Part shown: positions 37,617 through 60,779 of the stretch, piece after piece
Layout of the letters: each line of letters starts with the position of its first letter
Numbering within the stretch: the stretch's first letter is position 1
IMG/VR virus record: IMGVR_UViG_3300027969_000039
Coordinates: 124,001-188,000 of that record
DNA length: 64,000 bases
Reading direction: 5' to 3' (one strand)
Position numbers and translations under genes: made by a program
Notes under the pieces: model-generated
Told to the model about the DNA's origin: nothing
Databases searched by the model: none
Seen by the model: only the letters and a program-made list of their open reading frames with translations

Positions 37617-37640
37617 AGAAAAGGGCAACTAGTGCCCTTT
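37617..37640 (-). terminator. Intrinsic terminator after porin
   Basis: aaagggca/tgcccttt stem with U-rich tail. Confidence 0.7.
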
Positions 37641-37658
37641 GTTCTAATTTGAGTTAGA

Positions 37659-38911: not shown

Positions 38912-38934
38912 TAAGAAACCCGCCGAAGCGGGTT
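38912..38934 (-). terminator. Terminator of the tmRNA gene
   Basis: aacccgc-UUCG-gcgggtt followed by U-rich tail. Confidence 0.8.
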
Positions 38935-38939
38935 CTGGT

Positions 38940-39232: not shown

Positions 39233-39243
39233 ACTTCTATTTA

Positions 39244-39387
39244 TCACCAAGTTTTCTTAGCGATCCAATGTTGGATTTCTTGCACCCGCCATGCTAGTCC
39301 CCAAGGCAGTGTGAAAAATATCTTCTCACCACTAGGAGTATACATGGTCCGACCATCACTGTCAACCCCCATCAATCCTATAAACAT
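39244..39387 (-). CDS. 47-aa hypothetical protein (likely start MFIGLMG)
   Basis: GAGGAG RBS. Confidence 0.55.
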   Translation of the reverse strand: MFIGLMGVDSDGRTMYTPSGEKIFFTLPWGLAWRVQEIQHWIAKKTW

Positions 39388-39722: not shown

Positions 39723-41930
39723 TTATACACTTTTAAATTCTAGTTTGTCAAATTTAATGGGTGTATAATGTTTTGGAGATGTAGTATGTGAATTAGGAAC
39801 AGCTACGTTATATCTTTCAGGATTTGCCCATGAACCAGTATCTTGCCATTTATGTTTAAATGAGAAATCAATTGTACTATTTAAATGTCTTTCTTCTGCA
39901 ATTAACTCCATGAATTCTTCGTGATTTCTGCCACCGTCTCCCCACTTTGGTTTAGCTAGTTTTCTAGCACGAATGGATGCATTAGATTGTTGTCTAGAAT
40001 AATCTTGTGCAAAAAACGGAGATTTTGCCGATAAAGGATCTACTGGATCGATAATAGTGACCGGTTGTTGATAGTAATAATCAAAATCTGCTTCCCAATT
40101 ACCTTCATCATCTATTGTAAAATTATGATTAGCCCAATAAGGGCCGGCATTTCTTTCACCAAATTCTATCATATCTAAATCTTGATCAAATTTAATTGTA
40201 GCAGTAAATCCTCCTCGTGTACGCCATAGTATTCTAAACAATGTAAATATTTCATTTACTAAACTATCAGCAAAGGGATTGATGTCAGGATGTATTATAT
40301 TGTAATCAAAGTTTTCATATTCAATTTCTTTTTGCATTGTAGGATCATCAAACACAATTTTATAATGATGCATTGGCAAATTACCACGCTGCGGGATTGA
40401 AACTGATTTTTCAGTTAACAAATGCTGCAAGAATACTGCAAATACTTTCATCCTAACCATGACATGAAATTTAGAAAGTTTGAAATCTTTAGTTATCCAT
40501 CCACCTGCATACTTGTGTGCTAGTAAATTAAACTTATCAGGATTTTGTCCAACAATAGTATCCATACCTAAACCAAATCCAAATCCAGCAGCAATATTAG
40601 CTATGTTGTTATTTCTATTACGCCATAAAAAAGTCATTGTATCTGCAAAATTTTGATATGATTCTGTTGGGAACCCTACTATCCAATTGGTAAAAGCATT
40701 TACTCCAGTTTTCTTCCCATCTATAAAGTTTTGTTCCATTTCAGCAATAGTAACACCTTTGTCAATATCATCTAGTACAGGCTGACTTCCAGACTCTATG
40801 CCATAGTTTAACATATGACAACCTGAATCAGCTAAATCTTGATAGAATGCTAAATCCATTCGTCCATCACATCTTGCATATCCAGTCCAATGAATTTTCA
40901 TACCTTTAGCAATGACTCCTTTGCAGAAGGCTCTAAGTTCATTTAGATTTCCATTTACCAAACTATCAATAAACCAAACTATGTCAGTTCCTTTTTCATA
41001 GTATAATGTTTCTATTTCTTTTAGAATATCAGTAGCCATGCGTTGACGATATTTCCAAAAATGTGTTTCTTCACAAAAGGTGCATTTTGCAGTACAACCT
41101 CTACTCAGTTCACTATTAACTCCATTTGGAAATTCATATTCATTGAAATCAAAATTAGAATAATCAGGCATAGGCAAGTCATTCAAATTTAATCTTTGTT
41201 CTTCAGGTTGTGCTAGCTTTTGAACCTTGTCGTGAATTATTCCGTTTTCAATTTCTTCTAAAATTTCTAAAAGAAGTAATTCACCTTCCCCATTGATAAC
41301 ATAATCAAACATATTATCATCTTCTCCACTCCAAGCATGTGGTTCTTGGCAAGGTCTAATATTAGGACCACCTACTAGTATTTTAATATTTGGCAATCTT
41401 TCTCTTAATTTTTTCACCATATACTTAACTGGTTCTGCATTTGTATAGTACATAGTAAATCCTATAACGTCAGGAGGATTTTTAACAATCTGTTCTATGT
41501 ATTTGTTTAATAAAATGCTCAGATGCGGATGTATATCACTATGGTAGTCTTTTGCTAACCATTTCCAATCTCTTGCGCCGTCCCACGGGTCGAAATCAAT
41601 AAGTCCATCATTTCGCCATTTGTGAGATAAGTTATATGCCTTTACATTCAAATCAATACAATTAGATTCATATCCAGCGCCTTTTGCAACCGCAGACAGT
41701 CTTGCAAGATTGAACGGTGGAAACATTGGTGCCCATTCTGGACAAAGTATTAATAATAACTTTGTTTTTCTATACGCATAGTTGATATCAATAGTAGTTA
41801 CATTTTTTTGAACTTTAGTTTTTGCATAAGGTGCAATAGCTTGCAACATAGCCAGATGCTTAATATCAGCGTCAGGCTCTAGTGGTCTTGATTCCACTAT
41901 CTTTTTTTTATATTGATATAATTCACTCAT
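39723..41930 (-). CDS. Cobalamin-binding radical SAM enzyme
   Basis: PPFNLARL, VGGP, GEGE, SRGCTAKCTFC, GIESGS, IVGFPTE. Confidence 0.9.
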   Translation of the reverse strand: MSELYQYKKKIVESRPLEPDADIKHLAMLQAIAPYAKTKVQKNVTTIDINYAYRKTKLLLILCPEWAPMFPPFNLARLSAVAKGAGYESNCIDLNVKAYNLSHKWRNDGLIDFDPWDGARDWKWLAKDYHSDIHPHLSILLNKYIEQIVKNPPDVIGFTMYYTNAEPVKYMVKKLRERLPNIKILVGGPNIRPCQEPHAWSGEDDNMFDYVINGEGELLLLEILEEIENGIIHDKVQKLAQPEEQRLNLNDLPMPDYSNFDFNEYEFPNGVNSELSRGCTAKCTFCEETHFWKYRQRMATDILKEIETLYYEKGTDIVWFIDSLVNGNLNELRAFCKGVIAKGMKIHWTGYARCDGRMDLAFYQDLADSGCHMLNYGIESGSQPVLDDIDKGVTIAEMEQNFIDGKKTGVNAFTNWIVGFPTESYQNFADTMTFLWRNRNNNIANIAAGFGFGLGMDTIVGQNPDKFNLLAHKYAGGWITKDFKLSKFHVMVRMKVFAVFLQHLLTEKSVSIPQRGNLPMHHYKIVFDDPTMQKEIEYENFDYNIIHPDINPFADSLVNEIFTLFRILWRTRGGFTATIKFDQDLDMIEFGERNAGPYWANHNFTIDDEGNWEADFDYYYQQPVTIIDPVDPLSAKSPFFAQDYSRQQSNASIRARKLAKPKWGDGGRNHEEFMELIAEERHLNSTIDFSFKHKWQDTGSWANPERYNVAVPNSHTTSPKHYTPIKFDKLEFKSV

Positions 41931-44900
41931 ATATATTTTTAAATTTTTCTTTTAACCAAACCCAATCATAGCTTAGTCGTAATTGTGTTAAGTCACCGTT
42001 GACTTGTTCATAATATTGTACAGCATGTTGGGCACCTTGTAAACTATATTCGGCAAAGTCACCAATTGCTGTTGTTAGCCATGTATTTAATCGTATTTCA
42101 TTTTCTTCCGTTTTGGATGCTTTTAACTTAATACATTCACGGAAAGCTGTACGCCATGCATCCCACTCACTACTGTTATACATACCAATACCACAATTAA
42201 CAGGAACAACTTCATGCTCACTATCCATTGTAAAGTCTAACCCAGTACCAAAGTTCTCTAATGTAAGTTTTTTGTTGTTAGCAACGATAGCTTGATGACC
42301 ATATACTAACCCGTTCACTGGATTGGTAGCATGAAATATATAGTGCTTAGGTATCTGTAATCTGTCCGGTTGCCAGTTAAAATCAAACTTTGCTGATACT
42401 TTTAATTTAGCGTTTACTAAAAAATACCATGGTGTATTGCTACTATTTGCCGCAGCGTGTTGACTTTTTACACGACCATTTATACCGTCTATTCTAGTAA
42501 TTTTGTTTGGTAATCCTTGTGTTATCTTTAATAGATGTTCGTAATTTCTATCAGCACTAGTTTCACCGTTACTAAAGAACACAATGTCCAATGGGTTAGA
42601 TTCTATAAGTTTATTATTCTTAATAATGTATGGATAATCGTATAACTCTTTCTTTACATACTGTTTAGCTTCTTTTGGAACTATAATTCTTGTTCCACCT
42701 GTACTAGTAATAGTAATATTTTTAGTTTCATTGCTCCATAGATTCATTGGTTCAACATCAACGGCATTGATGTTTTTATTATCTTCAGTCACAAACACAG
42801 CGTATGGAAAATTAAAATCAGTATTTACGCTAGAAGCATGTGTATCATTTTCTGTAATAATGATTGGAGCCGGCAATCGGTTTACTCTTTGATGTTGATT
42901 ATAGTTAATCTTCCCATACTCTTCCAAAGAGTTCATATTATCAATCAATGTTCTAAGTTTATTAACATCAATTAAAAATGTGTCACCAAACTTTTGCCTA
43001 TCGCTAGGAAATACATGTAAGTGTTCTTTAGCAAATGGGTCGCAAATATAAGTAAAATCAAAATCTTTATAATCACATACTGTACTAGCTACCCACACAT
43101 AATGTTCTTTTTTTACTGGGAGTTTATCTAGCATACTCTTAAAAGTATTCAAATAACTAGTTTCATACTTAATAATTAAGTTATTGATATTAGACAAGTC
43201 TTTATTGTCATGGTCGATATAAACTATATCATACAATACATTAGACGCTTTGGCTTTTATAGTTTTAACAAAATTCAAGTTAGAAAGATGTTCAATAATT
43301 TTTATATATTTGGTATCTTGCGGGAATGTTTCTTTATTAACTAAGTAAGTGGTACCCCAATGACTCCACTGAGTGCCGAACACATGCACCATCTTCATTT
43401 GCCATGGGTTAGGATAATATTCAAAATCAAAATCAGTGTAATCTAATTCACTATTGAGTATCCAACATAAATTACTGGTAGCACGATTGATGCAGCGATT
43501 TATTGTATCGACCCAACTGTTTAAATATCTTGTCTTTATTATATTTGGGAATCTAATCTTAAGTTTTTCAAATCTAGTTTGTGATTCAATATTACTTCTA
43601 TCAACAAAGAACATATCAATTTTATTTTTTATTTGTTCTTCTACCCAATTAAACTCAGTATTTCCTCTGAGCCACATTACAGAGTTTACTAAAAAAGTTT
43701 GTGTTTTTGTGTTTTCACTTGAACCAAACACTTGAATATACTGTGACTGCTCAATACTAGGTTTCCAATCAAAATTAAAATTAGTATAATCTATGTGAGG
43801 ATTTAATGCCCAAAATATTTCGTCAGGATGTTGTTTAATCAAATCTTCTAATGAAGTGGTCAACAAATATTTAGGATAAGATTTTTCAATTTCAATTGGC
43901 TTTTCTAAAACTATTCTTTCCATATACACTGATTCACCAGTGTTATCAGGGGTCAAATATCTAGGACCGTCATCCCTATCTAATATTGTACCAAATCTAT
44001 AAACAAACGGTGGGCTGGTATCATCGGGATGCCAGCTGAAATCAAAGTTACTAACATCTATACCATCAGATACTTTCCAATTAACCATTGTAGCTAATCG
44101 CACAGATTTTATATCATCTATATATTTTATTTCAGTTGCATCTTCAACTACATATCTTGGGCCATTTGTTTTTTGATGTTGTGTTCCAAATTGGTATATG
44201 TATGGTTTTTCATTAGTGTTGGGGTGCCAGCTAAAATCAAACTGACTAATATCAATAGTATTTGGAATGATCCAATTTGGTGATATTTCTGTGGTAACCA
44301 CTGTTGCCCTTAAGGTGTCTATATATTTAATTTCAGATGCGCCTTCAACTTCATATCTCAATCCACCTGTACTTTGATGCTGTGTTCCAAATTCATATAT
44401 TAATGGAGGGTCAGTATCATCAGGGTGCCATGAGTAATCAAAATTATCAATAGGAAGAAGTTCTTTCCAGTTTTTTTTATTAGGCAATCTTTTTGCTTTT
44501 TGAACGCTTACATATTTTATTTCAGTGGCATTTTCAACTATATATTTTGGTCCACCTGTCTTTTGATGTTGTGTACCAAATTGATATATGTATGGGGGTG
44601 CATCTGGGTGGGGAACCCATGTAAAATCAAAATTTTCTGTGTCTATGTCAGACGGTATGCTCCAGTTATTTTTATTTGCTTTGGTACATGCTTTGATATC
44701 TTCTACGTAACTAAATTGTGTAGCATCTTTAACTACATATTTTGGACCACCGCGGTTATTCCATATAGTAGCAAATTCGTAAATATATGGTGGACTAGTT
44801 GGATTAGGTCTCCAACTGAAATCAAACTTAGTAGCATCAATATTATCAGGTATTTCCCAATTAGTTTGATCAGGCAATAATTCAACTTCATCGAACATAT

Positions 44901-45984
44901 ATTTTCGTTTAGTTGCCCCTGGACAATAATAAGCTAATACAGGTTCAACCGCTGCTTCATTCCACTTGCTGCCCCATACATACACAAACGGAGGTTCGGT
45001 ATCATCTGGGTGCCATGAGTAATCAAAATTAGTTACTGGTAGTATTTCTTTCCAGTTTTCCCTATTAGGCAATCTTTTTGCTTTTTGAATATCTATATAT
45101 TTTATGTCTGTGGCATCTTTAACTATATACCTTGGCCCACCTGTCTTTTGCCATTGAGTACCAAATTCGTATATATATAGAGGACTAGTTGGATTAGGTC
45201 TCCAACTAAAATCAAATTCAGCAGTGTCAATGTTATCAGGTATTTCCCAATTAATTTTATTAGGCATCAAGTCTAATAAAGTATCAAGATATTTTCTGTT
45301 AGTTGCGTTAGGACAATAATAAGCTAATACAGGTTCAACCGCTGCTTCATTCCACTTGCTACCCCATACATACACAAACGGAGGTTCTCTCGGGTCAGGT
45401 CTCCATGACAAATCAAACTTAGACTTATCAATAGGTATTATTTCTTTAAAATTTTTGCTGGGTAATAATTCAACTACTTGATCCATATACTTACGATCAA
45501 TATCATGCGAATAAGGAGCATGATATTCTAGTACTGGTTGTAATTCTACCGGATTCCATTTATTACCCCATACATATACATATGGAGGGCTAGATGGATC
45601 TGGATGCCAACTGAAATCAAATTTAGTTTCATCAACTAAATCTAGCAATACCCAATTGTCGTTTTTTTCGTTTTTTCTTTTTAGTGGATCAACATCAGCA
45701 CGATATATAATTATTTCACTATATTGTTTAGGGCATAACCATGTGCCACTATCTTTTTGATGAAAGCTAGGCCATACATTGTTATGTTCTTCTGCCCAAA
45801 CATCCTCATCGGGCAAGAATTCAAAGTCAAAATCCCAATCAAAATTACGATAATCACAATGTTCGTTGATTATCCAAAAATGTTCCGTGGTACATTGATT
45901 TCTAGCATCTTCTATTGAAGTTGCAAATCTTTCTCTTGGGTGAATATTGGGTTTAGAGCCGTAATAAAAGACATCTCGTAGCAT
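41923..45984 (-). CDS. 1353-aa repeat protein with C-terminal glycosyltransferase-like domain
   Basis: About 10-12 FDFSW(H/R)P...PYIY.FG modules; C-terminus (RIDGING...H.AAA...AWRTAFREC.K) resembles 57610-58563. Confidence 0.7.
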   Translation of the reverse strand: MLRDVFYYGSKPNIHPRERFATSIEDARNQCTTEHFWIINEHCDYRNFDWDFDFEFLPDEDVWAEEHNNVWPSFHQKDSGTWLCPKQYSEIIIYRADVDPLKRKNEKNDNWVLLDLVDETKFDFSWHPDPSSPPYVYVWGNKWNPVELQPVLEYHAPYSHDIDRKYMDQVVELLPSKNFKEIIPIDKSKFDLSWRPDPREPPFVYVWGSKWNEAAVEPVLAYYCPNATNRKYLDTLLDLMPNKINWEIPDNIDTAEFDFSWRPNPTSPLYIYEFGTQWQKTGGPRYIVKDATDIKYIDIQKAKRLPNRENWKEILPVTNFDYSWHPDDTEPPFVYVWGSKWNEAAVEPVLAYYCPGATKRKYMFDEVELLPDQTNWEIPDNIDATKFDFSWRPNPTSPPYIYEFATIWNNRGGPKYVVKDATQFSYVEDIKACTKANKNNWSIPSDIDTENFDFTWVPHPDAPPYIYQFGTQHQKTGGPKYIVENATEIKYVSVQKAKRLPNKKNWKELLPIDNFDYSWHPDDTDPPLIYEFGTQHQSTGGLRYEVEGASEIKYIDTLRATVVTTEISPNWIIPNTIDISQFDFSWHPNTNEKPYIYQFGTQHQKTNGPRYVVEDATEIKYIDDIKSVRLATMVNWKVSDGIDVSNFDFSWHPDDTSPPFVYRFGTILDRDDGPRYLTPDNTGESVYMERIVLEKPIEIEKSYPKYLLTTSLEDLIKQHPDEIFWALNPHIDYTNFNFDWKPSIEQSQYIQVFGSSENTKTQTFLVNSVMWLRGNTEFNWVEEQIKNKIDMFFVDRSNIESQTRFEKLKIRFPNIIKTRYLNSWVDTINRCINRATSNLCWILNSELDYTDFDFEYYPNPWQMKMVHVFGTQWSHWGTTYLVNKETFPQDTKYIKIIEHLSNLNFVKTIKAKASNVLYDIVYIDHDNKDLSNINNLIIKYETSYLNTFKSMLDKLPVKKEHYVWVASTVCDYKDFDFTYICDPFAKEHLHVFPSDRQKFGDTFLIDVNKLRTLIDNMNSLEEYGKINYNQHQRVNRLPAPIIITENDTHASSVNTDFNFPYAVFVTEDNKNINAVDVEPMNLWSNETKNITITSTGGTRIIVPKEAKQYVKKELYDYPYIIKNNKLIESNPLDIVFFSNGETSADRNYEHLLKITQGLPNKITRIDGINGRVKSQHAAANSSNTPWYFLVNAKLKVSAKFDFNWQPDRLQIPKHYIFHATNPVNGLVYGHQAIVANNKKLTLENFGTGLDFTMDSEHEVVPVNCGIGMYNSSEWDAWRTAFRECIKLKASKTEENEIRLNTWLTTAIGDFAEYSLQGAQHAVQYYEQVNGDLTQLRLSYDWVWLKEKFKNIYE
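44788..45387. repeat. Near-identical internal DNA repeats at 390-bp (130-codon) offset
   Basis: 44921-44997 vs 45311-45387 differ at one base; about 44791-44862 matches about 45181-45252. Confidence 0.85.
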
Positions 45985-46006
45985 CTTATATTTAAACAGT
46001 TACTGT

Positions 46007-47074
46007 TTATGTGAAATATTTTTCAATGTTTTTAGTTGTGCTATAATCAGTTGACGAATGGAAATGCTGTTTGTTATGTTCTACAATTTCTTTTATATTA
46101 GTTTGCCATTCTATCCATTCTTCAGCTGGTTTAGAAATTAATCTTTGTATTTCTTTAAAGACTGCTATCAATCTTTCTTCATTATTTTCAATAGAATCAT
46201 ATGATTCATTAATGAATGGACTAAATGTTTTGTACCCTATTTTTCTCAGAACTTTTAATGTGTGGGGTCTACCTAACATAACAAAGGGATGCATACAACC
46301 TAAACATTTGAATGTTTTTTCAGTTATAAAAGTTGAATCAACTCCATAATTTGGTTCAGTATAAAACAATGTCTCAGTTATTATACTGAAATAACTATCA
46401 TCAAAATATTTTATGTCATCAGGTATAATATCAATTGGATTACTTCTATCTGTAGTGATATTAAGCCTTAAAGGAAATTTATTACGATTCTTTTTTATAT
46501 TAACATATTCATCAGATAATATATCCCAATTGAGTCCTGGCCCTTCAAATGAATAATATCCTTTGTCTATGTAGGAATACATCAATTCTAATAAATCTAG
46601 TCTATGCTTTCTAGGCATTTTATTAAAACATAGAAATACTTTTTCTTTTTCTTTTATATTATATTCAACTGGCAAAGAACTTAATATTGAATAATTTAAA
46701 CTAAACCAATGTGCGTTAACACATATTACTGAAATTTTGTTTTTCCAATTGTATTGTTTATATATTTTTTCATACACTTCTAGCCCATCTGATGCACCAC
46801 ATACATAAATTAAATCTTTAGAATCTATATTATTTTTTAGTAAACTAGCAATATCTTGAATTTTTTGAAGCATCTGCAATACTATTCCTTCACCTATCAG
46901 ATAAAATAAAAACTTAGTTTTTCCTTCTTTTTTTGCTTGTAGTATGTCTTTTACAATTATTTCATTGCTAGTAGTAGGAAATGCGGTATGTAAGTGCGAA
47001 TCAATAATATGTATATTATCTATATGATTTTGTAATTCTGGCCATATTTTTAGTAATAGCGTAGTAGGGGTCAT
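46007..47074 (-). CDS. Putative glycosyltransferase-like protein (ET...TEK family)
   Basis: FLCFN..PR.HR, YFSIITET...FITEKTFK...HPF...GYKTF...I.ESYD. Confidence 0.55.
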   Translation of the reverse strand: MTPTTLLLKIWPELQNHIDNIHIIDSHLHTAFPTTSNEIIVKDILQAKKEGKTKFLFYLIGEGIVLQMLQKIQDIASLLKNNIDSKDLIYVCGASDGLEVYEKIYKQYNWKNKISVICVNAHWFSLNYSILSSLPVEYNIKEKEKVFLCFNKMPRKHRLDLLELMYSYIDKGYYSFEGPGLNWDILSDEYVNIKKNRNKFPLRLNITTDRSNPIDIIPDDIKYFDDSYFSIITETLFYTEPNYGVDSTFITEKTFKCLGCMHPFVMLGRPHTLKVLRKIGYKTFSPFINESYDSIENNEERLIAVFKEIQRLISKPAEEWIEWQTNIKEIVEHNKQHFHSSTDYSTTKNIEKYFT

Positions 47075-48267: not shown

Positions 48268-48299
48268 AAAATTTCCTTATTTAATATAATGGTTAAAAT

Positions 48300-48312
48300 T
48301 ATTTAGTAAATA
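48300..48312. promoter_or_regulatory. Back-to-back TAAATA late-type promoters
   Basis: tatttag-taaata between divergent genes. Confidence 0.55.
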
Positions 48313-48316
48313 ATAG

Positions 48317-51424: not shown

Positions 51425-51425
51425 A

Positions 51426-53642: not shown

Positions 53643-55000
53643 ATGATATCCTTAAACAATTCAGTACCTTTCAAATTACGATGCTTGTCATTAAACTCAA
53701 TAAAATGTTTTAATCTGTCACTCAACTCGCTATTGTATGGAGAATTTAATACTGAATCTTTATACGCATTAAAAGTATGGTCATCAACTACAAATCTATT
53801 TGGGGCGTCATTGTAATATTTTCTATAATTCATTGATTGTTTGGTAACTATTTCAATATATTCTTCTCTAATGTTTTTAGGAATAGCGTTCAATGAAAGA
53901 AATTCAGGTGCAGATAAAGTTATAGGCCACCACGTTATGTGTTTATCATGTTTAGAAGATAGCAAATACAACATACTCCAAATTGACATAACATGCTTAA
54001 AATTCATAGCTTGTAGTACAGTATAGCATTTTATCTTCCAACCTGGTCGAGTTGATGCTAACTCAACTGCTTTATCTACGTTTTCTCTAACTTTGGCAAA
54101 GTCACTAGGATACCTAATATATTCACCTACTTCACCAACCCCGTCAATACTCATCTGTATTTCAACGTTTTTAAATTTTTCTAACTTACTATAGAATGAT
54201 TGATTCCAAGTTGTCATATTACTAGTAAATTCTATTTGGCAGTCTGTGTTATTTGCTTCCAATAACATTTCAAACATTTTGTAATTAGCTTTAATTAAGG
54301 TAGGTTCACCGCCGGTAGTATATAATCTACGCAAAGTAGGAGCCATCTTTTTAAAATTGTTGTAAAATATTTCAGTTTCAAACCAATCACGAACATCAGT
54401 CTCATTAACTATTTGTTGTTCTGTTTTCCACTTTGACTTTAACCAACTTAATTTTGGATTATCTAAATAATTTTTATCTAAATATTCTGTTCTTTCTTGA
54501 TGTATCAAAGAACTACTCATGCCCCAACAACTAACACATTGTAAGTTACATTGATTGCCTAATCTAAGTTCCAGGCTAACAGGTAATTGTGGTACTGATT
54601 GTTTTTCTAAATTTGCATCTAAATAATTAGATAACAATTTATCTTTTTGTATATATGACAACCACATTGCATTTTGACCCATTCTAGGACTATGTCCTGA
54701 TAGTTTTTCTATTTTGTAGCAATCTTGACAATCAGGAGCACCTTCTCCTTTTATTTTTCTTTCTCTAACATATTGCATATAAATGCTGTCCCATATTTCA
54801 TCAATGTCATGGTATCCTAAATTGTAAGATTTAGCATTTTTATCTGAGACAAAGGTATCTAAAGGAATACTACAGCATAGTTTTATATTACCGTTTGGGT
54901 TAGTGTTTAAATTTAACCATGGCAAAGTACAAAATTTATCTACACTTTTAATAGCCCAATCAAGTTTTTTAGTAACTGGTGCAGTTTCTAATTCATTCAT
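53639..55000 (-). CDS. Radical SAM protein, N-terminal twitch/SPASM-like
   Basis: FCTLPW...LCC...CQDC; GNQCNLQCVSC; TGGEP. Confidence 0.88.
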   Translation of the reverse strand: MNELETAPVTKKLDWAIKSVDKFCTLPWLNLNTNPNGNIKLCCSIPLDTFVSDKNAKSYNLGYHDIDEIWDSIYMQYVRERKIKGEGAPDCQDCYKIEKLSGHSPRMGQNAMWLSYIQKDKLLSNYLDANLEKQSVPQLPVSLELRLGNQCNLQCVSCWGMSSSLIHQERTEYLDKNYLDNPKLSWLKSKWKTEQQIVNETDVRDWFETEIFYNNFKKMAPTLRRLYTTGGEPTLIKANYKMFEMLLEANNTDCQIEFTSNMTTWNQSFYSKLEKFKNVEIQMSIDGVGEVGEYIRYPSDFAKVRENVDKAVELASTRPGWKIKCYTVLQAMNFKHVMSIWSMLYLLSSKHDKHITWWPITLSAPEFLSLNAIPKNIREEYIEIVTKQSMNYRKYYNDAPNRFVVDDHTFNAYKDSVLNSPYNSELSDRLKHFIEFNDKHRNLKGTELFKDII

Positions 55001-55034
55001 AATATTTTTAATTCATTCATAATATTTTTAATTC
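54990..55034. repeat. Exact 20-bp tandem duplication at a gene junction
   Basis: attcattcataatattttta twice plus a partial copy. Confidence 0.9.
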
Positions 55035-56219
55035 CGGATAAATTTCTATAAATTTTTCATTTCTAACTTCATCAATGACTGTTATTTGTTTTTTAAATTC
55101 AGATAACAGATTAGTATGATCTACACTATCCATATAACTTACTATTCCTTTTACATCATGTATGATGTTGTCTTTTGCATTATTCTTAACTAACCAATCA
55201 CAATATTCTTCATACAGTTGTCTAATTTTTTCTTTCTCATCTTCTGGTAAAATAGTAATTGAAAAGTATCTTGGATGTGTCAAAATATTTATTCGTATGT
55301 TATTGATGTCCAATAATCCTTCTTCTACCCATGATTTATGAAACTCAAACAAACTATGCACACTAAAGATACCTACAGTAGGGGTGATTTCGAAATAAAC
55401 ATCTGGACAAAGCATTATCATTTGTTGTCTGTTTAGTACTATGTCATCCCAGTTAGTTCCTTTCCTAGCATATTCAGCTATCTTGCCGTGCGTATCTAAA
55501 CTAGCAGCGACACGAACATCTTTGAACTTTTTCCAATAATCAAGTATAGACTTGTCCTTGTAACGGAAATTACTAAAGTTAGTTGTATATCTTAACTTGA
55601 TATGTGTAAGACCTTTTGACAACCAGTAATCTAGTATCTCATAATGTTGGGGAGTTATCAATGCTTCGCCTCCGGCAAAATACACTTCTTCTATCGTATC
55701 TAAATGCGGCATTAAATCATTCATAAAGTTAGGATTAGATTTTAAATCAATGAATTTCTTTGTTACTGATTCTGGGTGCAATTTTACTTGATCATCATAC
55801 CAACTGCTACTCAAGCTAGGACCGCATGTCCTGCATTTCATGTTGCATAAATTACTGAATCTAATATCTAAGTATCTCATTTTAAAGTCATCAATGCTAC
55901 CATCTTCTTTAGTTTCAGTTAAGTAAGGTAAATGATTTTTAAAACTTTGTAAACTGTTTTTACGCAACGTCCAACTGTCTGCGGTATCTTCTAACTCATA
56001 ACACCGTGAACATGCTGTAGGTTTTTCTCCATTAAGCATTTGTTTTCGTATGGTTTTATAGTTGGTATTGTTCATCAAATCATTAAGAGATTCTTTATGA
56101 ACATTCCCAAATACTTCTTTAGTATCACTCATGCAACATGGAAACGCATCGCCGTTAGGCCATATGTGTGTATGTATCCATGGCATCAAACAAATAACAT
56201 TTTGATCAATATTTTTCAT
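55017..56219 (-). CDS. Radical SAM protein, N-terminal twitch/SPASM-like
   Basis: CLMPW...PCC...CSRC; SNLCNMKCRTC; AGGE. Confidence 0.9.
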   Translation of the reverse strand: MKNIDQNVICLMPWIHTHIWPNGDAFPCCMSDTKEVFGNVHKESLNDLMNNTNYKTIRKQMLNGEKPTACSRCYELEDTADSWTLRKNSLQSFKNHLPYLTETKEDGSIDDFKMRYLDIRFSNLCNMKCRTCGPSLSSSWYDDQVKLHPESVTKKFIDLKSNPNFMNDLMPHLDTIEEVYFAGGEALITPQHYEILDYWLSKGLTHIKLRYTTNFSNFRYKDKSILDYWKKFKDVRVAASLDTHGKIAEYARKGTNWDDIVLNRQQMIMLCPDVYFEITPTVGIFSVHSLFEFHKSWVEEGLLDINNIRINILTHPRYFSITILPEDEKEKIRQLYEEYCDWLVKNNAKDNIIHDVKGIVSYMDSVDHTNLLSEFKKQITVIDEVRNEKFIEIYPELKIL

Positions 56220-57610
56220 AATGGATTAAGTTGGTTGGTAGATTGGCACAATCTATAAAAATCTAACATTTCAGGAAATATAGCTAACATATCAGTCTCC
56301 CTGCGTTCATCTAATTCGTTGAACCAATTATAGAAATCTCTACGTCCTTCTATTAATTTGTTTTCTGGATAAACTGTCTCTGCCATATAATCTACTACAC
56401 GTTTAAACTTTTCATATTCAACCGTAGTAAATTTATTGCTAGCATTATCATCTACGTTTTCTTCCATGAACTTCAATGCATCGTGCATATAAGGCATAAA
56501 TTTATCTTTAGGCAATATGTTCATATCGTATTGAATTGGTTCACGCAGATATGGGGTATCAAATCTAATACGATGACTTTTTGTATCTTCATACCAATTA
56601 TATTGCTGACGCCATTCTAAGAATTTAGCCAAATACTCTTTAAACGTAGTTACACTAAAGATATTAAACGTAATCATAAATGTGATTGGGCTATCTGTGC
56701 GTTGTAAGTATGCGTGAAAATTCTTTTCCCACAATTCTAAGTCTAGTCCAGTACGAATATATTCGGCACGAGGTCCCCAGGTGTCTAGACTAGTGAACAA
56801 CTTAAATGCACGGATTTTTCCATCGTCACACAACTGTTTAACATTGTCACTTAGTTTCTCAACCAGACTTGTTTTAGTACCTAGGTTACTGTTGATATTT
56901 AACTCTAACCATGGCATAGGTTGATTGTCAATCTCTTTCAATAACTTCCATGTACTAGTGTGCATTGTAGGTTCGCCACCTGTTACACGCATGATATTCA
57001 ATGTCTTACGTAATTCAGGCCACCATTTCCAAAATGCGTCAACGTATGGATTTTCTTCTTCACGCTGATATAGTTTCATCCAATCAATATCGCAACGATG
57101 ATTCTTAACTGTAGTAACAGGACCGTTATTTTTTATTTCATTGTAAAAACTAGTAGAGTACTTCGGATGACAATATCCGCATTTGAAATTACACTCATTA
57201 CCAAAATTAATCTCTATGTATTCCGGGTTAATGTTTTGATCCCATGGACCTTCTACTGTTTGTTTATAGCGTTCTTCGTTGAATATTGAAGCATTACGAA
57301 TGTGCCTGTCACTAATATAGTCAGGGCCCATTGCTTCAATGTTCCAGCAATATTGACATCCAGTTGGCTTACTACCTTCAAGCATTTCTTTACGCTCAAG
57401 TTTCTTATGCATTGTATTATGCAATGCTGATGGGTTATCAGCTAATTCACTTAAGGGAATTTTGTGTGGTTTGGGATGATAGCAACTATGTGTCTCACCT
57501 GATTGCAAGTACATAGTTACATGGTGCCACTTAGCTAAACAAAAAGAAGGGGTGGTTTCATTCGCAATCTTAATCTTAATGTCTTGAATTCTTTGGTGTT
57601 CACTACTCAT
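56216..57610 (-). CDS. Radical SAM protein, N-terminal Cys/His-rich
   Basis: FCLAKW...HSCYHP...CQYC; GNECNFKCGYC; TGGEP. Confidence 0.88.
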   Translation of the reverse strand: MSSEHQRIQDIKIKIANETTPSFCLAKWHHVTMYLQSGETHSCYHPKPHKIPLSELADNPSALHNTMHKKLERKEMLEGSKPTGCQYCWNIEAMGPDYISDRHIRNASIFNEERYKQTVEGPWDQNINPEYIEINFGNECNFKCGYCHPKYSTSFYNEIKNNGPVTTVKNHRCDIDWMKLYQREEENPYVDAFWKWWPELRKTLNIMRVTGGEPTMHTSTWKLLKEIDNQPMPWLELNINSNLGTKTSLVEKLSDNVKQLCDDGKIRAFKLFTSLDTWGPRAEYIRTGLDLELWEKNFHAYLQRTDSPITFMITFNIFSVTTFKEYLAKFLEWRQQYNWYEDTKSHRIRFDTPYLREPIQYDMNILPKDKFMPYMHDALKFMEENVDDNASNKFTTVEYEKFKRVVDYMAETVYPENKLIEGRRDFYNWFNELDERRETDMLAIFPEMLDFYRLCQSTNQLNPL

Positions 57611-58563
57611 CACCATCCTTCAATCTTGCGAATAACATCCATTTCAGTTACTAATGGCCCCAGATTACGAAAATCTGCTTTATAATGTCTCTTAAAGAAT
57701 TTGCTTTGTCCTCTATCTAGTGTACACATTGGCAATCCAAGTTTGTCATGTAATCCTGCACCTAATAGTGTTGCTTCACGCTCTGGATCTCTATTATATT
57801 CTTGTTCTTCCCACATTGTTATATAGTTGTCAAACCATTGAACACTGGTGTGGTCCCAATCAGTTAACATGGTCATGTATGTTCCAAGTCTTGCCCCGTA
57901 AATAGCCCACATCCCATTCTCAACATCAGCACCTACATTGTGCCATATGGTTAAGTTGTTTAGATTGCGACTAGCAACTGTTTCTTTGAAAGTATTAATA
58001 TCAGGCTTTGCTCCTTTGTCTAAACACATCTTGACTCCTTCACGGAATCCAGCACGCCATGCTTGAAATGGTGTATAGTTAGGGTAAGTAGTAGAGTAAC
58101 AATCATACATTGCCCAGTATAGGTTATCTTTGCTGTCTAAACAAAAGTCAGCAATACGTGATACATCACCGTCAGTTTGATGCTCATGTGTTTTCATTTC
58201 ACGCACATAAGTTTTTGTCCAGCTACTCATACCGCCATTGCCGTAACGTAATCCATTTATACTATTAACTGCTTTCCAACGGAACTGTGCTTTCTGAAAC
58301 TTTTCATCTTTGCTAGTGAAGTCTAATTGAATGTTGAAGAAACTTTCTTCTGGCATGTTGTCACCATCAATCAATATGAATCGTTCAGTATCACTAGCCT
58401 CACCTGCTGCTTTGTGTGCGGCATCACTACCTTTGACTCCGTCAACTCTTTTAGCCCATGGGACCATATTCTTAATCTTAAGCCAAAATTCTTCTTTCTG
58501 TGGTTCATCATAGCTTAAGTAGATACAATCTAAATCAGCTACATCAACAATATCATAACTCAT
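57610..58563 (-). CDS. Putative GT-A glycosyltransferase-like protein
   Basis: LSYDEP, RVDGVKG...AH.AA, IDGD (DxD), NGL.YGNGG, AWRAGFREGVK. Confidence 0.65.
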   Translation of the reverse strand: MSYDIVDVADLDCIYLSYDEPQKEEFWLKIKNMVPWAKRVDGVKGSDAAHKAAGEASDTERFILIDGDNMPEESFFNIQLDFTSKDEKFQKAQFRWKAVNSINGLRYGNGGMSSWTKTYVREMKTHEHQTDGDVSRIADFCLDSKDNLYWAMYDCYSTTYPNYTPFQAWRAGFREGVKMCLDKGAKPDINTFKETVASRNLNNLTIWHNVGADVENGMWAIYGARLGTYMTMLTDWDHTSVQWFDNYITMWEEQEYNRDPEREATLLGAGLHDKLGLPMCTLDRGQSKFFKRHYKADFRNLGPLVTEMDVIRKIEGW

Positions 58564-58894
58564 ATGTTTTTAATTTCCATTTAGTATGAGGATCAGTTGA
58601 TTCAACTATAATGCTTACATCATCAATACTACAAGCAATGCCTTCTAATTCATTTGGCATCAGTTTATGAACCACTGCTTCTGCTTTGAATCTTGAAACT
58701 TTACCATCAATTACTCTAACATCAGGTCTGGCTTCAACAAAGGTCATTGCATCTATAACAATATAGTTACCTTCTACTGACTTGTCTCCAGTATAGCATA
58801 TTACTTTACCATGCTCATCATAATATAATCTAAACTCAGGTGGTTCCAATTTAGGCGCTTCCCAAATTATTACATAGTCTTTTTCTTCATTCAT
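58553..58894 (-). CDS. Hypothetical protein
   Basis: Operon context. Confidence 0.65.
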   Translation of the reverse strand: MNEEKDYVIIWEAPKLEPPEFRLYYDEHGKVICYTGDKSVEGNYIVIDAMTFVEARPDVRVIDGKVSRFKAEAVVHKLMPNELEGIACSIDDVSIIVESTDPHTKWKLKTYEL

Positions 58895-59631
58895 AGTACT
58901 ATCTTATCACAAAAATTCTTCACATGATAGTGAAATGGATACTGCTGTGGCACAGTCTGTACTCTAATTTGATTAGGTAAGCATTCATATATAAAAGTAT
59001 CTGTCCAATTTTCAGTTGGAGTTCCATTGATATATTGTTTCATGTGAACCATACTCATTTCAGTAAATGTAGGCAATGTAGTTTTTTCTACTCCCATGAT
59101 ATGACATGCTAATGCATAAACCCAATCAGTACTTGCTAATTCATCTGGATTACACTTCAATATTTTTTTATATTCTTCCCAGTTATTGAATATTTCTTTT
59201 ACTAAATCAAAGAATTTACTTGCTGTATCTGATTTCTTGAAATAAGTTATAGCATTATATACGTCTGGCAATTTATTATCATCGATGAATCTACGATAGA
59301 ATCGGATATCTGATATTTCTTGTTTAAAGTTTCTGATTGTATTTGACACTACAATATCTCTGTCTTTTAGTACATCCCACCAGTGTTCAATGTTGCGTGG
59401 GATGTACATATCAGCTTCTAATTTGATTGTATAGACATACGGGCTTGCTTCATACACTTGCCAATCATTTGCAAAGCCACCCAAATTACCGTGAGGTAAC
59501 ATATCAGTTGTAATAATAGTTACATTGGCATCGGGCATTACTCTGAGTATGCTTTTCTGTAGTGTTTTGGCACAATTAGTATAGCTAATTTTCTCAGTAT
59601 CCTGTGCCATTATTACAAAACCTTTATTCAC
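58891..59631 (-). CDS. Putative GT-A nucleotide-diphospho-sugar transferase
   Basis: ASPY..TIKLEAD, YF.KS, HMK. Confidence 0.65.
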   Translation of the reverse strand: MNKGFVIMAQDTEKISYTNCAKTLQKSILRVMPDANVTIITTDMLPHGNLGGFANDWQVYEASPYVYTIKLEADMYIPRNIEHWWDVLKDRDIVVSNTIRNFKQEISDIRFYRRFIDDNKLPDVYNAITYFKKSDTASKFFDLVKEIFNNWEEYKKILKCNPDELASTDWVYALACHIMGVEKTTLPTFTEMSMVHMKQYINGTPTENWTDTFIYECLPNQIRVQTVPQQYPFHYHVKNFCDKIVL

Positions 59632-60430
59632 TTATCAACTCCATAAAGTTTTCTTTGTTCATAACATGAAAGTCCATATCTTTTATGGTAATGTATTCTT
59701 TTCGAATCTTTCCTCTATTCCAACTGTCAAACATTATAGTATACTCAGTGTTAAATTCATTGTCATTGTTTTTATATACACTAGTATTTTTACCAACATG
59801 CATCAGATTCCATGGGATAACATCTTCGATTGGAGTAGTATGTCCATTGACAATTCTAGTAGCCAATGTTAATGCATAGTCATTGCGGAAAGTAACAGAT
59901 ATAAACCCGTGAATACTTGCATAATGTTCAAAGTTATTTTGAATCATTTCTAAACTATTGAATATTTGTTCTGCTCTTTTTGTTTTCTTAAAGGTAACTA
60001 CAGTAGCCCACAATGTATTAAAACTGTATACACTTAACATTTCTTGCACCGCGTTTGGATGCATCAAAAAACTTGTAGTGTCGTGGCAGCAAAAGTCAGT
60101 TGGTAATTCGAAGGTCTTTAGTAACTTATCTGAATTTACCATGTAATCAGTATCTAGCAAGATAGTTTCATCATATGGACTAAATTGATATGCACGGTAC
60201 CTGCCTTTATTGTACCATGGTCCCCAATCTCTTTTGTTGGATTTATCAGCAGGAGCCATAACAATGTTATCAAATTGATATGATTGTTTAACTGGCAGTG
60301 ATTCACTATCTGTTATTAAGGTAACAGGAATATCCAAAAAGTGATTTATGCGTTTAGCAGTTGACACTGCCATCTCATAGTAATTATATTTTGGACTGTT
60401 GAATGCAAATAATAATGCGCCTCTAGTCAT
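59624..60430 (-). CDS. Putative GT-A nucleotide-diphospho-sugar transferase
   Basis: SPYDETILLDTD (DxD), WATVV.F.K, RND, HVMNK. Confidence 0.7.
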   Translation of the reverse strand: MTRGALLFAFNSPKYNYYEMAVSTAKRINHFLDIPVTLITDSESLPVKQSYQFDNIVMAPADKSNKRDWGPWYNKGRYRAYQFSPYDETILLDTDYMVNSDKLLKTFELPTDFCCHDTTSFLMHPNAVQEMLSVYSFNTLWATVVTFKKTKRAEQIFNSLEMIQNNFEHYASIHGFISVTFRNDYALTLATRIVNGHTTPIEDVIPWNLMHVGKNTSVYKNNDNEFNTEYTIMFDSWNRGKIRKEYITIKDMDFHVMNKENFMELISE

Positions 60431-60732
60431 CTTTTCTTCTCAAGTTCAATCCATTCATTATACCAAATTTCCATAACGTTTGCATACGTGACAGAAAGTT
60501 TATGTAGCAAGTCAATTCTATTAACTTTGACTGGGTTATTGAAAGTATCAATTAAAATTATATAATTATCAGTGGATGAGTTTAAAAAGTTGATGGTTTC
60601 TAAATTGGCTCGCCAAAGTCCAGACTGATCAGCTACGATAAACTTACTATCGTACTTGTCTTTTAGATATGATTTGGCTGAATTATGATTGAAGCGGGCT
60701 TTAGCTTCACTTATTAATGTGGTTGTATCCAT
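60427..60732 (-). CDS. Hypothetical protein
   Basis: AGGAG RBS, CTAAATA upstream; ILID...NPV motif. Confidence 0.65.
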   Translation of the reverse strand: MDTTTLISEAKARFNHNSAKSYLKDKYDSKFIVADQSGLWRANLETINFLNSSTDNYIILIDTFNNPVKVNRIDLLHKLSVTYANVMEIWYNEWIELEKKR

Positions 60733-60779
60733 GTGTACTCCTAAGAGTATTTAGATAGATACAACTATGATGTGAAAAA

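What the first reader, a model, noticed from the sequence alone, without database searches (positions are those of the whole stretch)
39723..60732. 21-kb radical SAM / B12 / glycosyltransferase cluster directly downstream of tail genes: candidate virion glycan-tailoring pathway
Seen: seven CxxxCxxC radical SAM enzymes (two with B12-binding domains; four with an N-terminal Cys-rich auxiliary segment; one with a C-terminal Cys cluster), a UDP-glucose/GDP-mannose dehydrogenase, three GT-A-like proteins, two ET...TEK paralogs and a giant repeat-GT fusion. Most are co-oriented and overlapping with baseplate/fibre genes, and several have TAAATA late motifs. Known: twitch rSAMs such as BtrN oxidise or epimerise sugars, and B12 rSAMs methylate unactivated C or P. 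Inference: late-expressed machinery that builds and modifies an unusual glycan on Ser/Thr-rich virion fibres or on the host surface. DNA hypermodification is less likely because late timing and structural linkage do not fit it well.
Basis: inference. Interest (0 to 1): 0.8.

Follow-up and report, generated by a model that had tools for sequence, protein, structure and literature searches.

The report
Radical-SAM-rich sugar island beside phage fibres
A freshwater jumbo phage carries, right after its tail-fibre genes, a 21-kb block of sugar-transferring enzymes and seven radical SAM enzymes that most likely builds an unusual, highly variable glycan; hundreds of uncultured phages share the layout, but what the glycan is attached to is unknown.

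Summary
Window 39723-60732 encodes seven radical SAM (rSAM) enzymes: two B12-type, four with an N-terminal twitch domain (NCBIfam NF033640), and one with a C-terminal Cys cluster. It also encodes an NDP-sugar dehydrogenase, three GT-A-like proteins, two GT-B paralogues and a 1353-aa repeat protein with a degenerate GT-A-like end.

In 80 related viral contigs a constant core follows the fibre genes: u101, u268, u246, u113, u317, NTwi4. After it comes a variable block holding 0-7 N-twitch rSAMs, GT-B genes and sugar-tailoring enzymes. Ralstonia jumbo phage RsoM2USA is the only cultured phage found with the core.

The N-twitch profile's best solved relative is BtrN, a sugar-oxidising rSAM, with the domain order permuted. 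Bacterial homologues lie in polysaccharide loci. No cluster protein has a transmembrane segment.

The best reading is a cytoplasmic, rSAM-tailored glycan pathway tied to the fibre (host-recognition) module. The acceptor and the timing of expression are not established. Virion fibres are favoured and host envelope glycan is the main rival.

Fibre-linked islands with glycosyltransferases and rSAM cassettes were already noted descriptively in pelagimyophages, so this is a new variant of a known kind.

The parts
61743..62990 (-). fib415: fibre protein with a C-terminal intramolecular-chaperone (Peptidase_G2) domain. It is the first gene of the co-oriented run.
   Evidence: Pfam PF11962 at 26.1 bits; PHROG hits to virion structural proteins; ATAAATA at 63014-63020 upstream.
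60780..61733 (-). fib317: Ser/Thr-rich (26%) fibre-like protein and candidate glycan acceptor.
   Evidence: Composition; always adjacent to fib415 in 80 of 80 loci; RsoM2USA gp355 matches both fibre proteins.
60786..60803 (-). Terminator-like hairpin at the 3' end of fib317.
   Evidence: Consensus scan only.
60748..60753 (-). TAAATA promoter-like motif (ATCTAAATA) followed by a TAGGAG Shine-Dalgarno sequence, upstream of u101.
   Evidence: Conserved in five freshwater relatives while the flanking sequence diverges; motif enrichment 18 observed versus 2.8 expected.
60427..60732 (-). u101: small conserved protein of the constant core, function unknown.
   Evidence: Present in 75 of 80 loci; no credible family hit (only a sub-threshold PITH match).
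59624..60430 (-). u268: GT8-like GT-A candidate with a conserved DxD motif (DTDY).
   Evidence: Present in 80 of 80 loci; the profile's only PDB hits are glycogenin, E 0.016, aligned through the DxD; Atlas neighbours are Mannosyl_trans3 and Nucleotid_trans; alignment.
58891..59631 (-). u246: paralogue of u268.
   Evidence: Cross-hits between the two families; phrog_1903; present in 80 of 80 loci.
58553..58894 (-). u113: small conserved protein of the constant core, function unknown.
   Evidence: Present in 73 of 80 loci.
57610..58563 (-). u317: GT-A (GT2-like) domain with a conserved DGD motif plus a C-terminal helical domain.
   Evidence: Model pLDDT 79; Foldseek PDB hits BcsA, WrtF, RmlT, PBCV-1 A64R, TarP and SunS with probability 0.9-1.0; at least 600 viral matches.
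56216..57616 (-). NTwi4: N-twitch radical SAM enzyme, the one that belongs to the constant core.
   Evidence: NF033640 at 307 bits; present in 74 of 80 loci directly after u317; RsoM2USA gp349 is 35% identical.
55017..56219 (-). NTwi3: N-twitch radical SAM enzyme of a common type.
   Evidence: NF033640 at 396 bits; its cluster is found in 46 loci.
53639..55000 (-). NTwi2: N-twitch radical SAM enzyme of a rare type.
   Evidence: NF033640 at 269 bits; its cluster is found in 3 loci.
52671..53642 (-). rSAM323: radical SAM enzyme with a C-terminal Cys cluster.
   Evidence: Pfam hit; Cys positions; present in 24 of 80 loci; 42-45% identical to Bacteriovoracaceae homologues.
51426..52670 (-). NTwi1: N-twitch radical SAM enzyme of a rare type.
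   Evidence: NF033640 at 285 bits; its cluster is found in 3 loci.
50231..51424 (-). ETEK397: GT-B fold glycosyltransferase.
   Evidence: Model pLDDT 79; Foldseek hits to trehalose-6-P synthase and glycogen synthase, E 1.5e-4, probability 1.0.
48317..50239 (+). B12rSAM_B: B12-binding radical SAM enzyme, KedN5-like over its first 390 residues. It is the only gene on the + strand.
   Evidence: 242 bits against a cut-off of 700.
47071..48267 (-). NDP-sugar dehydrogenase (UDP-glucose/GDP-mannose dehydrogenase family).
   Evidence: Pfam N-terminal and central domains; TIGR03026 at 146 bits, below the 190 cut-off; GGACHPRD motif with the catalytic Cys read from the translation.
46007..47074 (-). ETEK355: paralogue of ETEK397 (GT-B).
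   Evidence: Alignment A5, 28% identity, shared ET...TEK...P...G..TF motifs.
41923..45984 (-). Rep1353: at least 9 repeats of about 65 aa (FDFSWxPDPxxPPYxYxFG) followed by a u317-like domain that lacks the DxD motif.
   Evidence: a 390-bp DNA tandem duplication at 44719-45422.
39723..41930 (-). B12rSAM_A: B12-binding radical SAM enzyme with a C-terminal extension of about 300 aa.
   Evidence: 54% identical to Halobacteriovorax MAG proteins.

Best explanation
The cluster is the variable, sugar-chemistry half of the phage's fibre (host-recognition) module. It is a set of soluble cytoplasmic enzymes that assemble an oligosaccharide and tailor it with radical chemistry.

Shown:
- The domain and fold identities of the proteins.
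- The conserved gene order fibre genes, u101, u268, u246, u113, u317, NTwi4.
- The combinatorial variable block that follows that core.

Inferred:
- The dehydrogenase supplies a uronic-acid nucleotide sugar.
- The GT-A proteins of the core (u268, u246, u317) start the glycan on its acceptor, and the GT-B enzymes extend it.
- Each N-twitch rSAM abstracts a hydrogen from a specific sugar carbon to oxidise or epimerise it, as BtrN-type enzymes do.
- The two B12 rSAMs C-methylate.

The acceptor is most likely a virion protein, namely the Ser/Thr-rich fibres encoded immediately upstream. That would give each phage lineage its own glycan coat on the host-recognition apparatus.

The confidence of 0.5 is for this statement as written, with a virion-protein acceptor as the favoured rather than established option. 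My own estimates for the parts: glycan pathway about 0.75; virion protein as acceptor about 0.4.
For: - Folds: u317 is GT-A, ETEK397 is GT-B, and u268/u246 are GT8-like. An NDP-sugar dehydrogenase is present.
- In 80 related loci the same slot also holds RmlC, DegT and class III aminotransferases, an epimerase/dehydratase, FkbM methyltransferases, a carbamoyltransferase and a hexapeptide acyltransferase.
- rSAM and GT-B genes are interleaved in those loci.
- The N-twitch profile's best solved relative is BtrN (E 3e-8). Its N-terminal twitch segment aligns with BtrN's C-terminal twitch domain.
- Bacterial homologues lie beside GT2, GT4, PMT_2, ABC-2 exporter, epimerase and UbiA genes in three phyla.
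- Linkage to the fibres: 80 of 80 loci, marine relatives, and RsoM2USA, where the neighbouring ORF361 and ORF356 are MS-confirmed virion proteins.
- The fibre gene fib415 and u101 carry the same TAAATA motif, and the one before u101 is conserved.
- No cluster protein has a transmembrane segment, and there is no flippase, polymerase or initiating phosphoglycosyl transferase.
- The fibre proteins are 22-26% Ser+Thr.
Against: - No chemistry has been shown for any N-twitch rSAM, and I found no paper that characterises this family.
- The GT assignments rest on predicted models with low TM-scores (0.3-0.44) and on one weak profile hit (E 0.016).
- Gene order conserved within one phage lineage can reflect descent rather than function.
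- In Bacteriovoracaceae the rSAM cassette occurs with variable flanks and sometimes with no glycosyltransferase nearby.
- The TAAATA motif also precedes the ligase, PstS and porin genes, so shared timing with structural genes is unproven.
- The other flank of the cluster is a block of host-directed genes (porin, PstS, GT4). That fits a host-surface role equally well.
Confidence: 0.5

Rival explanations
1. The enzymes perform the same glycan chemistry, but the acceptor is the host envelope. They remodel Und-PP-linked O-antigen or capsule intermediates at the cytoplasmic face, and the host's own export machinery delivers the product. This changes the cell surface during the long infection, for example to block superinfection or to stop progeny re-adsorbing.
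For: - This reading was proposed for the fibre-linked glycosyltransferase, UDP-glucose dehydrogenase and rSAM islands of pelagimyophages (PMC7029224).
- Bacterial N-twitch homologues sit in loci with ABC-2 exporter, GT2 and PMT_2 genes.
- The cluster abuts the phage's porin, PstS and GT4 genes.
- Soluble glycosyltransferases normally act on lipid-linked intermediates (established knowledge).
Against: - The phage encodes no membrane component, flippase, polymerase or ligase in the cluster.
- The core is fixed next to the fibre genes in every locus examined.
- The core carries the same motif as the fibre gene.
Confidence: 0.25
2. The rSAM enzymes act on protein, not sugar. They would introduce cross-links, epimerisations or C-methylations into the fibre proteins, in proteusin/RiPP style, and the glycosyltransferases would be a separate function.
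For: - SPASM/twitch rSAMs are mostly peptide maturases, and weak NCBIfam hits to such families appear.
- B12rSAM_A scores 99 bits against the RiPP C-methyltransferase model.
- The fibre proteins are rich in Thr, Asn, Val, Gly and Ala.
Against: - All hits to peptide-maturase models are far below their cut-offs.
- No PqqD/RRE-type domain, leader-bearing small ORF, protease or exporter is present.
- Bacterial homologues occur without fibre genes, in polysaccharide loci.
- The rSAM genes are interleaved with GT-B genes and sugar-tailoring genes.
Confidence: 0.1
3. The cluster hypermodifies phage DNA, by glycosylating and tailoring a hydroxymethylpyrimidine, to evade restriction.
For: - Phage glycosyltransferases often target DNA (T4-type; established knowledge).
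- rSAMs take part in some thymidine hypermodifications (my own knowledge of the Lee et al. 2018 work; not checked here).
- The rSAM cores show weak similarity to the nucleotide-acting enzymes viperin and MoaA.
Against: - No hydroxymethylase, DNA-binding domain or T4-type DNA glycosyltransferase was seen among the window genes that were scanned.
- Up to seven rSAMs plus several GT-B enzymes imply an oligosaccharide larger than any known DNA adduct.
- The position is fixed among fibre genes rather than among replication genes.
Confidence: 0.07
4. The cluster makes a diffusible aminoglycoside-like or other glycosylated small molecule.
For: The enzyme types (twitch rSAM, B12 rSAM, glycosyltransferases, dehydrogenase) recall the butirosin and gentamicin pathways (my own knowledge). 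BtrN is the best solved relative.
Against: - No cyclitol synthase, exporter or resistance gene is present.
- Such a product would not explain the invariant linkage to fibre genes.
Confidence: 0.05

Closest known systems
Host recognition cluster (HRC) of T4-like pelagimyophages and cyanomyophages (Zaragoza-Solas et al. 2020, PMC7029224)
   Same: Both are hypervariable islands downstream of a giant structural protein and the tail fibres. Both hold glycosyltransferases (GT8 is the most common), a UDP-glucose dehydrogenase and insertable radical SAM cassettes. The window likewise has a 6459-aa protein upstream of the fibre genes.
   Different: This is a different phage lineage: freshwater contigs of 212-303 kb whose only cultured relative for these genes is Ralstonia jumbo phage RsoM2USA. 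The paper is descriptive. It defines neither the constant core with its variable block nor the N-twitch family, and it reports that its freshwater group lacks rSAM and LPS genes.
BtrN (butirosin 2-deoxy-scyllo-inosamine dehydrogenase) and other sugar-acting twitch rSAMs
   Same: BtrN is the best solved relative of the N-twitch profile (E 3e-8). The auxiliary-cluster Cys motif and the CxxxCxxC motif both align.
   Different: The domain order is circularly permuted: the twitch domain is N-terminal here and C-terminal in BtrN. Overall similarity is low, and neither the substrate nor the reaction is known.
Class B (cobalamin-dependent) rSAM methyltransferases (PhpK, KedN5, GenK-type)
   Same: Both have a B12-binding domain followed by a radical SAM domain in the usual order.
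   Different: Scores are far below every equivalog cut-off (116 against 600; 242 against 700). Both proteins carry long C-terminal regions of 250-300 aa with no family match.
Virus-encoded virion glycosylation (chlorovirus PBCV-1 A64R; mycobacteriophage capsid and tail glycosylation, Freeman et al. 2023)
   Same: Soluble virus-encoded glycosyltransferases lie next to structural genes. The PBCV-1 A64R structure (2p6w) is among the Foldseek hits for u317, with probability 1.0.
   Different: No radical SAM enzyme is known in those systems (my own knowledge). Glycosylation of the virion is not demonstrated here.
Bacterial ABC-transporter-dependent polysaccharide loci that contain N-twitch rSAMs
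   Same: They carry the same rSAM family, often in tandem arrays (up to 8 copies), beside GT2, GT4, PMT_2, ABC-2 transporter and epimerase genes.
   Different: The phage cluster has no exporter or membrane protein and is tied to fibre genes.

Membership tests
NCBIfam NF033640 (N_Twi_rSAM, twitch domain-containing radical SAM protein) | Whole-protein score above the curated cut-off of 170 bits | tested here: met
   285, 269, 396 and 307 bits for the four cluster proteins. The extra copy at 17642-18685 scores 157 bits, just under the cut-off.
NCBIfam NF033640 (N_Twi_rSAM) | N-terminal Cys-rich twitch segment followed by a CxxxCxxC radical SAM core | tested here: met
   Cys at positions 29, 70 and 73 are invariant and position 10 nearly so; the CNxxCxxC motif is invariant. 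Pfam SPASM matches residues 10-74 and 24-95. The segment aligns to the BtrN twitch domain.
Class B cobalamin-dependent radical SAM enzymes | B12-binding domain N-terminal to a radical SAM domain | tested here: met
   PF02310 scores 38.9 bits (cut-off 32.1) for 39723-41930 and 30.9 bits (just under) for 48317-50239. PF04055 is above its cut-off in both.
PhpK, KedN5 and RiPP C-methyltransferase equivalogs | Score above the equivalog or subfamily cut-off | tested here: not met
   116 against 600, 242 against 700, and 99 against 282.
UDP-glucose/GDP-mannose dehydrogenase family | NAD-binding, central and C-terminal UDP-binding domains, plus the catalytic Cys | tested here: inconclusive
   The N-terminal and central domains are above the Pfam cut-offs. 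The C-terminal domain was not detected. TIGR03026 scores 146 bits against 190. The GGACHPRD motif with Cys is present (read).
GT-A fold glycosyltransferases (GT2-like): u317 | Rossmann-like GT-A fold with a DxD motif | tested here: met
   The top 50 Foldseek hits are nearly all GT-A glycosyltransferases (the rest GT-A-like nucleotidyltransferases); for the best of them E is about 1e-3 and probability 0.9-1.0. The DGD motif is nearly invariant. There is no Pfam GT2 hit, so sequence-family membership is not shown.
GT8 (glycogenin-like): u268 and u246 | GT-A fold, DxD motif, and match to GT8 models | tested here: inconclusive
   The profile's only PDB hits are glycogenin-1, at E 0.016. The DxD motif is conserved. 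Atlas neighbours are Mannosyl_trans3 and Nucleotid_trans. There is no Pfam hit and no structure model was made.
GT-B fold glycosyltransferases: ETEK355 and ETEK397 | Two-Rossmann-domain GT-B fold | tested here: met
   Foldseek hits to OtsA/Tps1, glycogen synthase and SenB, E 1.5e-4, probability 1.0. GT10 membership is only hinted at (Atlas score 0.78) and there is no Pfam hit.
Fibre-linked host recognition cluster of aquatic myophages | Lies beside the tail fibres and a giant structural protein, is hypervariable between relatives, and holds glycosyltransferases, sugar genes and rSAM cassettes | tested here: met
RiPP biosynthetic cluster | Precursor peptide, RRE/PqqD-type recognition domain, and a protease or exporter | tested here: not met
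   No such Pfam hits. No conserved small ORF lies before the bacterial cassettes.
Phage DNA hypermodification system | Pyrimidine hydroxymethylase or equivalent, plus a DNA-directed transferase | tested here: inconclusive
   None was found among the window genes that were scanned. The rest of the genome, about 150-240 kb, was not examined.
Virion glycosylation system | Glycan covalently attached to virion proteins | not testable with these tools
   This needs glycoproteomics. RsoM2USA is available as a cultured model.

The most novel reading that the evidence does not exclude
N-terminal-twitch radical SAM enzymes are a large, uncharacterised class of carbohydrate-tailoring enzymes, circularly permuted relatives of BtrN. 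Aquatic and soil jumbo phages shuffle them with glycosyltransferases: about 29 sequence types were counted in 80 loci. The result would be a hypervariable, radical-chemistry-made glycan code on their tail fibres, forming a second diversifying layer of host recognition or shielding alongside the fibre protein sequence.
Probability: 0.3. Interest if true: 0.85.

Novelty: new variant of a known kind. Interest (0 to 1): 0.62.

Why it matters
If the reading is right, it matters in three ways.
- It would be the first case of radical SAM chemistry in virus-encoded glycan synthesis.
- It would assign a substrate class to a curated but functionally blank enzyme family (NF033640) that is common in phages and in bacterial polysaccharide loci.
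- It would explain what the large variable islands next to the tail fibres of abundant aquatic myophages are for.

The u317 family alone gave at least 600 matches in IMG/VR, so the system is ecologically widespread. A cultured phage, RsoM2USA, carries the minimal core, which makes the question directly testable. The enzymes would also be a source of new sugar epimerase, oxidase and C-methylase activities.

Tried and rejected
- Megablast of the cluster and of its flank against 50,697 phage records gave no match.
- Single-sequence PDB searches of u317, u268 and ETEK355 gave nothing useful.
A closer set, A2, worked.
- RiPP reading: there is no precursor peptide, RRE domain or protease, and all scores are below threshold. 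Rejected as the main reading.
- Canonical T4 late promoter TATAAATA: one match against 11 expected. The shorter TAAATA motif is the enriched one, but it also precedes non-structural genes, so it was not used as proof of late timing.
- RNA evidence: no RNA run was listed. Only freshwater DNA runs hold the sequence.
- The rSAM323 profile against the PDB gave only generic rSAM cores such as viperin and MoaA, which says nothing about substrate.
- Literature searches for 'N-terminal SPASM' and for jumbo-phage rSAM with glycosyltransferase found nothing. The hits for 'twitch domain-containing radical SAM' concern other enzymes.
- One alignment, A7, accidentally included a junk fragment. It was rebuilt as A8 before use.

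Full report
**Observation**

Sixteen genes fill 39723-60732, all on the minus strand except 48317-50239.

Pfam and NCBIfam confirm seven radical SAM (rSAM) proteins, each with a single CxxxCxxC motif.
- Two have an N-terminal B12-binding domain (39723-41930 and 48317-50239).
- Four have an N-terminal SPASM/twitch segment and pass the curated cut-off of NCBIfam NF033640, 'twitch domain-containing radical SAM protein' (285, 269, 396 and 307 bits against 170).
- One (52671-53642) has a C-terminal Cys cluster.

An eighth, related rSAM lies outside the cluster at 17642-18685 (157 bits). The protein at 47071-48267 is an NDP-sugar dehydrogenase. The central part of the cluster has lower G+C (0.30-0.35) than its flanks (0.37-0.42).

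**Provenance and context**

The window is part of uncultured viral contigs of 212-303 kb. Three IMG/VR contigs carry the cluster at 100% identity, and a JGI contig carries the adjoining fibre/core segment and the flanking genes, so the cluster is not an assembly artefact. Only freshwater and lake metagenome runs hold the sequence. Megablast against GenBank phages finds nothing.

Upstream on the coding strand lie a 6459-aa protein, a 206-aa protein and two fibre proteins. One of the fibre proteins has a C-terminal intramolecular-chaperone domain.

Downstream lie a permuted tmRNA, then genes for a porin, PstS, a metallophosphoesterase, a GT4 glycosyltransferase, DNA ligase, ClpX, ribosomal protein bS21, HSP20, ClpS and ClpP. 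The cluster therefore sits between structural genes and a block of host-directed genes.

**Anatomy across relatives**

A profile of the 317-aa protein (u317) found at least 600 matches in IMG/VR. I analysed the 80 best loci.
- All keep the order: giant protein, p206, fib415, fib317, u101, u268, u246, u113, u317.
- In 74 of the 80, the rSAM NTwi4 follows u317.
- After this constant core comes a variable block with 0-7 further N-twitch rSAMs. These are often interleaved with GT-B genes of the ET...TEK family. rSAM323-type genes occur in 24 loci. B12 rSAMs, the dehydrogenase and Rep1353-type proteins are rare.

The other genes in that slot include RmlC, an NAD-dependent epimerase/dehydratase, DegT and class III aminotransferases, FkbM methyltransferases, a carbamoyltransferase, a hexapeptide acyltransferase and DUF6071.

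The 261 N-twitch rSAMs of these loci fall into about 29 clusters at 40% identity. NTwi4 and NTwi3 belong to common types. NTwi1 and NTwi2 belong to rare ones.

The same core occurs in more distant settings.
- Marine contigs filed as bacterial MAGs carry it.
- One cultured phage carries it: Ralstonia jumbo phage RsoM2USA, gp355 to gp348. There the module follows ORF361 and ORF356, which were confirmed as virion proteins by mass spectrometry (PMC8504454).

**Protein identities**

- u317: the model has pLDDT 79, and its Foldseek matches are GT-A glycosyltransferases (BcsA, WrtF, RmlT, PBCV-1 A64R, TarP, SunS). Its DGD motif is conserved.
- u268 and u246: these are paralogues with a conserved DxD motif. 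Their joint profile hits only glycogenin (GT8) in the PDB, weakly (E 0.016). Atlas neighbours carry GT-A families.
- ET...TEK paralogues: they fold as GT-B. Atlas lists relatives fused to epimerase/dehydratase or methyltransferase domains.
- Rep1353: it has at least nine repeats of about 65 aa and a C-terminal u317-like domain in which the DGD motif is replaced, so it may bind rather than catalyse.

None of the 16 proteins has a predicted transmembrane segment.

**The N-twitch rSAM family**

A profile of 12 diverse members finds BtrN as its best solved relative (E 3e-8). The N-terminal Cys-rich segment aligns with BtrN's C-terminal twitch domain, and the CxxxCxxC region aligns with BtrN's N-terminus. 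This is a circular permutation.

I found no paper that characterises this family.

In bacterial genomes, 214 relatives were confirmed.
- They often occur in tandem arrays, up to eight in one locus.
- In Saprospiraceae, Acidobacteria and Bacteriovoracaceae they lie beside GT2, GT4, PMT_2 (GT-C), ABC-2 exporter, epimerase and UbiA genes.
- In other Bacteriovoracaceae, a cassette NTwi3, rSAM323, NTwi, NTwi4, with a B12 rSAM in some (40-55% identical to the phage proteins), sits in changing flanks. One lies next to an integrase.

**Expression signals**

The canonical T4 late motif TATAAATA is almost absent. TAAATA, however, lies within 60 nt upstream of 18 of 85 genes, against 2.8 expected. These include fib415, u101, the dehydrogenase gene, Rep1353 and B12rSAM_B. 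The copy before u101 (ATCTAAATA followed by TAGGAG) is conserved in five relatives.

The motif also precedes the ligase, PstS and porin genes. It therefore shows shared regulation with the fibre gene but does not show late timing. No RNA run was listed.

**Interpretation**

The sugar-pathway reading is well supported. What stays open is the acceptor.
- For a virion protein: the invariant position after the fibre genes, the shared motif, the purely soluble enzyme set, the Ser/Thr-rich fibres, and the precedent of viral GT-A enzymes that glycosylate capsids.
- For the host envelope: the bacterial contexts, the neighbouring host-directed genes, and the published reading of the equivalent islands in pelagimyophages (PMC7029224).
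- Protein modification by the rSAMs, DNA hypermodification and a diffusible product are less likely, for the reasons given under the rival explanations.

**Comparison with what is known, and novelty**

Fibre-linked hypervariable islands with glycosyltransferases, a UDP-glucose dehydrogenase and rSAM cassettes have been described in T4-like SAR11 phages. A T4-like marine genome with 12 rSAM genes has also been noted (PMC5332604).

Several things appear not to have been described:
- the split into a constant core and a variable block;
- the identity of the rSAMs as permuted BtrN-like enzymes;
- the link of those enzymes to bacterial polysaccharide loci;
- the extension to freshwater and soil jumbo phages;
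- the cultured model, RsoM2USA.

I rate the finding a new variant of a known kind.

**Limits**

- All functions are inferred from sequence, predicted folds and gene neighbourhood.
- The fold matches have low TM-scores because only one domain aligns.
- The 80 loci are the closest relatives of one protein and largely represent one lineage.
- The remainder of the phage genome was not examined.

Noticed in passing
window 38912-39282 (-): The phage encodes a permuted (two-piece) tmRNA. It matches Rfam beta_tmRNA at 155.6 bits and tmRNA_permuted at 148 bits; the tag peptide is ANDELYSLAA. Together with the kinship to a Ralstonia phage, this hints at a betaproteobacterial host.
   Followed up: partly
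window 17642-24321 (-): A block of proteostasis and translation genes: ClpX (23113-24321), ribosomal protein bS21 (about 22895-23116), HSP20 (about 22323-22613), ClpS (about 21950-22255) and ClpP (about 18685-19257). Directly after ClpP lies an eighth N-twitch-like rSAM (17642-18685; 157 bits, just under the family cut-off).
   Followed up: partly
window 34733-38558 (-): Host-envelope and phosphate genes next to the cluster: a porin (Porin_4, 37659-38558), PstS (36556-37575), a metallophosphoesterase (35700-36473) and a GT4 glycosyltransferase (34733-35731).
   Followed up: partly
window-wide, e.g. 8706-8712, 20867-20873, 45989-45994, 48302-48307: The TAAATA sites fall into two classes. One lies 20-33 nt before the start codon and is followed by a Shine-Dalgarno sequence. 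The other lies only 4-7 nt before the start codon with no Shine-Dalgarno sequence, which would give leaderless or near-leaderless mRNAs if TAAATA is a -10-type promoter element. This is notable in a phage that encodes its own bS21.
   Followed up: no
window 2354-8704 (+): A 2116-aa ORF with no Pfam or PHROG match, preceded by ATAAATA at -30. A 6459-aa ORF lies just beyond the window end, upstream of p206 (locus L090).
   Followed up: no
L012, L013, L015, L016 (Halobacteriovorax/Bdellovibrionales MAG contigs): A compact rSAM cassette: NTwi3-like, rSAM323-like, a short NTwi, an unknown 386-aa protein in some, NTwi4-like, and a B12 rSAM in some. Its proteins are 40-55% identical to the phage proteins. 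It sits in unrelated flanks, once next to an integrase, which suggests transfer between these bacteria and phages.
   Followed up: partly
L019, L020, L026, L021, L031, L022 (contigs filed as Betaproteobacteria, Verrucomicrobia, Rickettsiales, Haliscomenobacter and Legionellales MAGs): These contigs carry the core genes (u268, u246, u317) followed by N-twitch rSAM arrays; L019 and L026 also carry the fibre genes. They look like phage contigs binned into bacterial MAGs.
   Followed up: partly
window 44719-45422: A 390-bp tandem DNA duplication (1.8 copies, 80% identical) inside the Rep1353 gene, indicating recent repeat expansion.
   Followed up: no
window 9040-9774 (+) and 10185-10634 (-): A D-Ala-D-Ala carboxypeptidase-like gene (Peptidase_S11) and a dCMP deaminase. 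A MazG-like gene lies at about 12412-12705.
   Followed up: no
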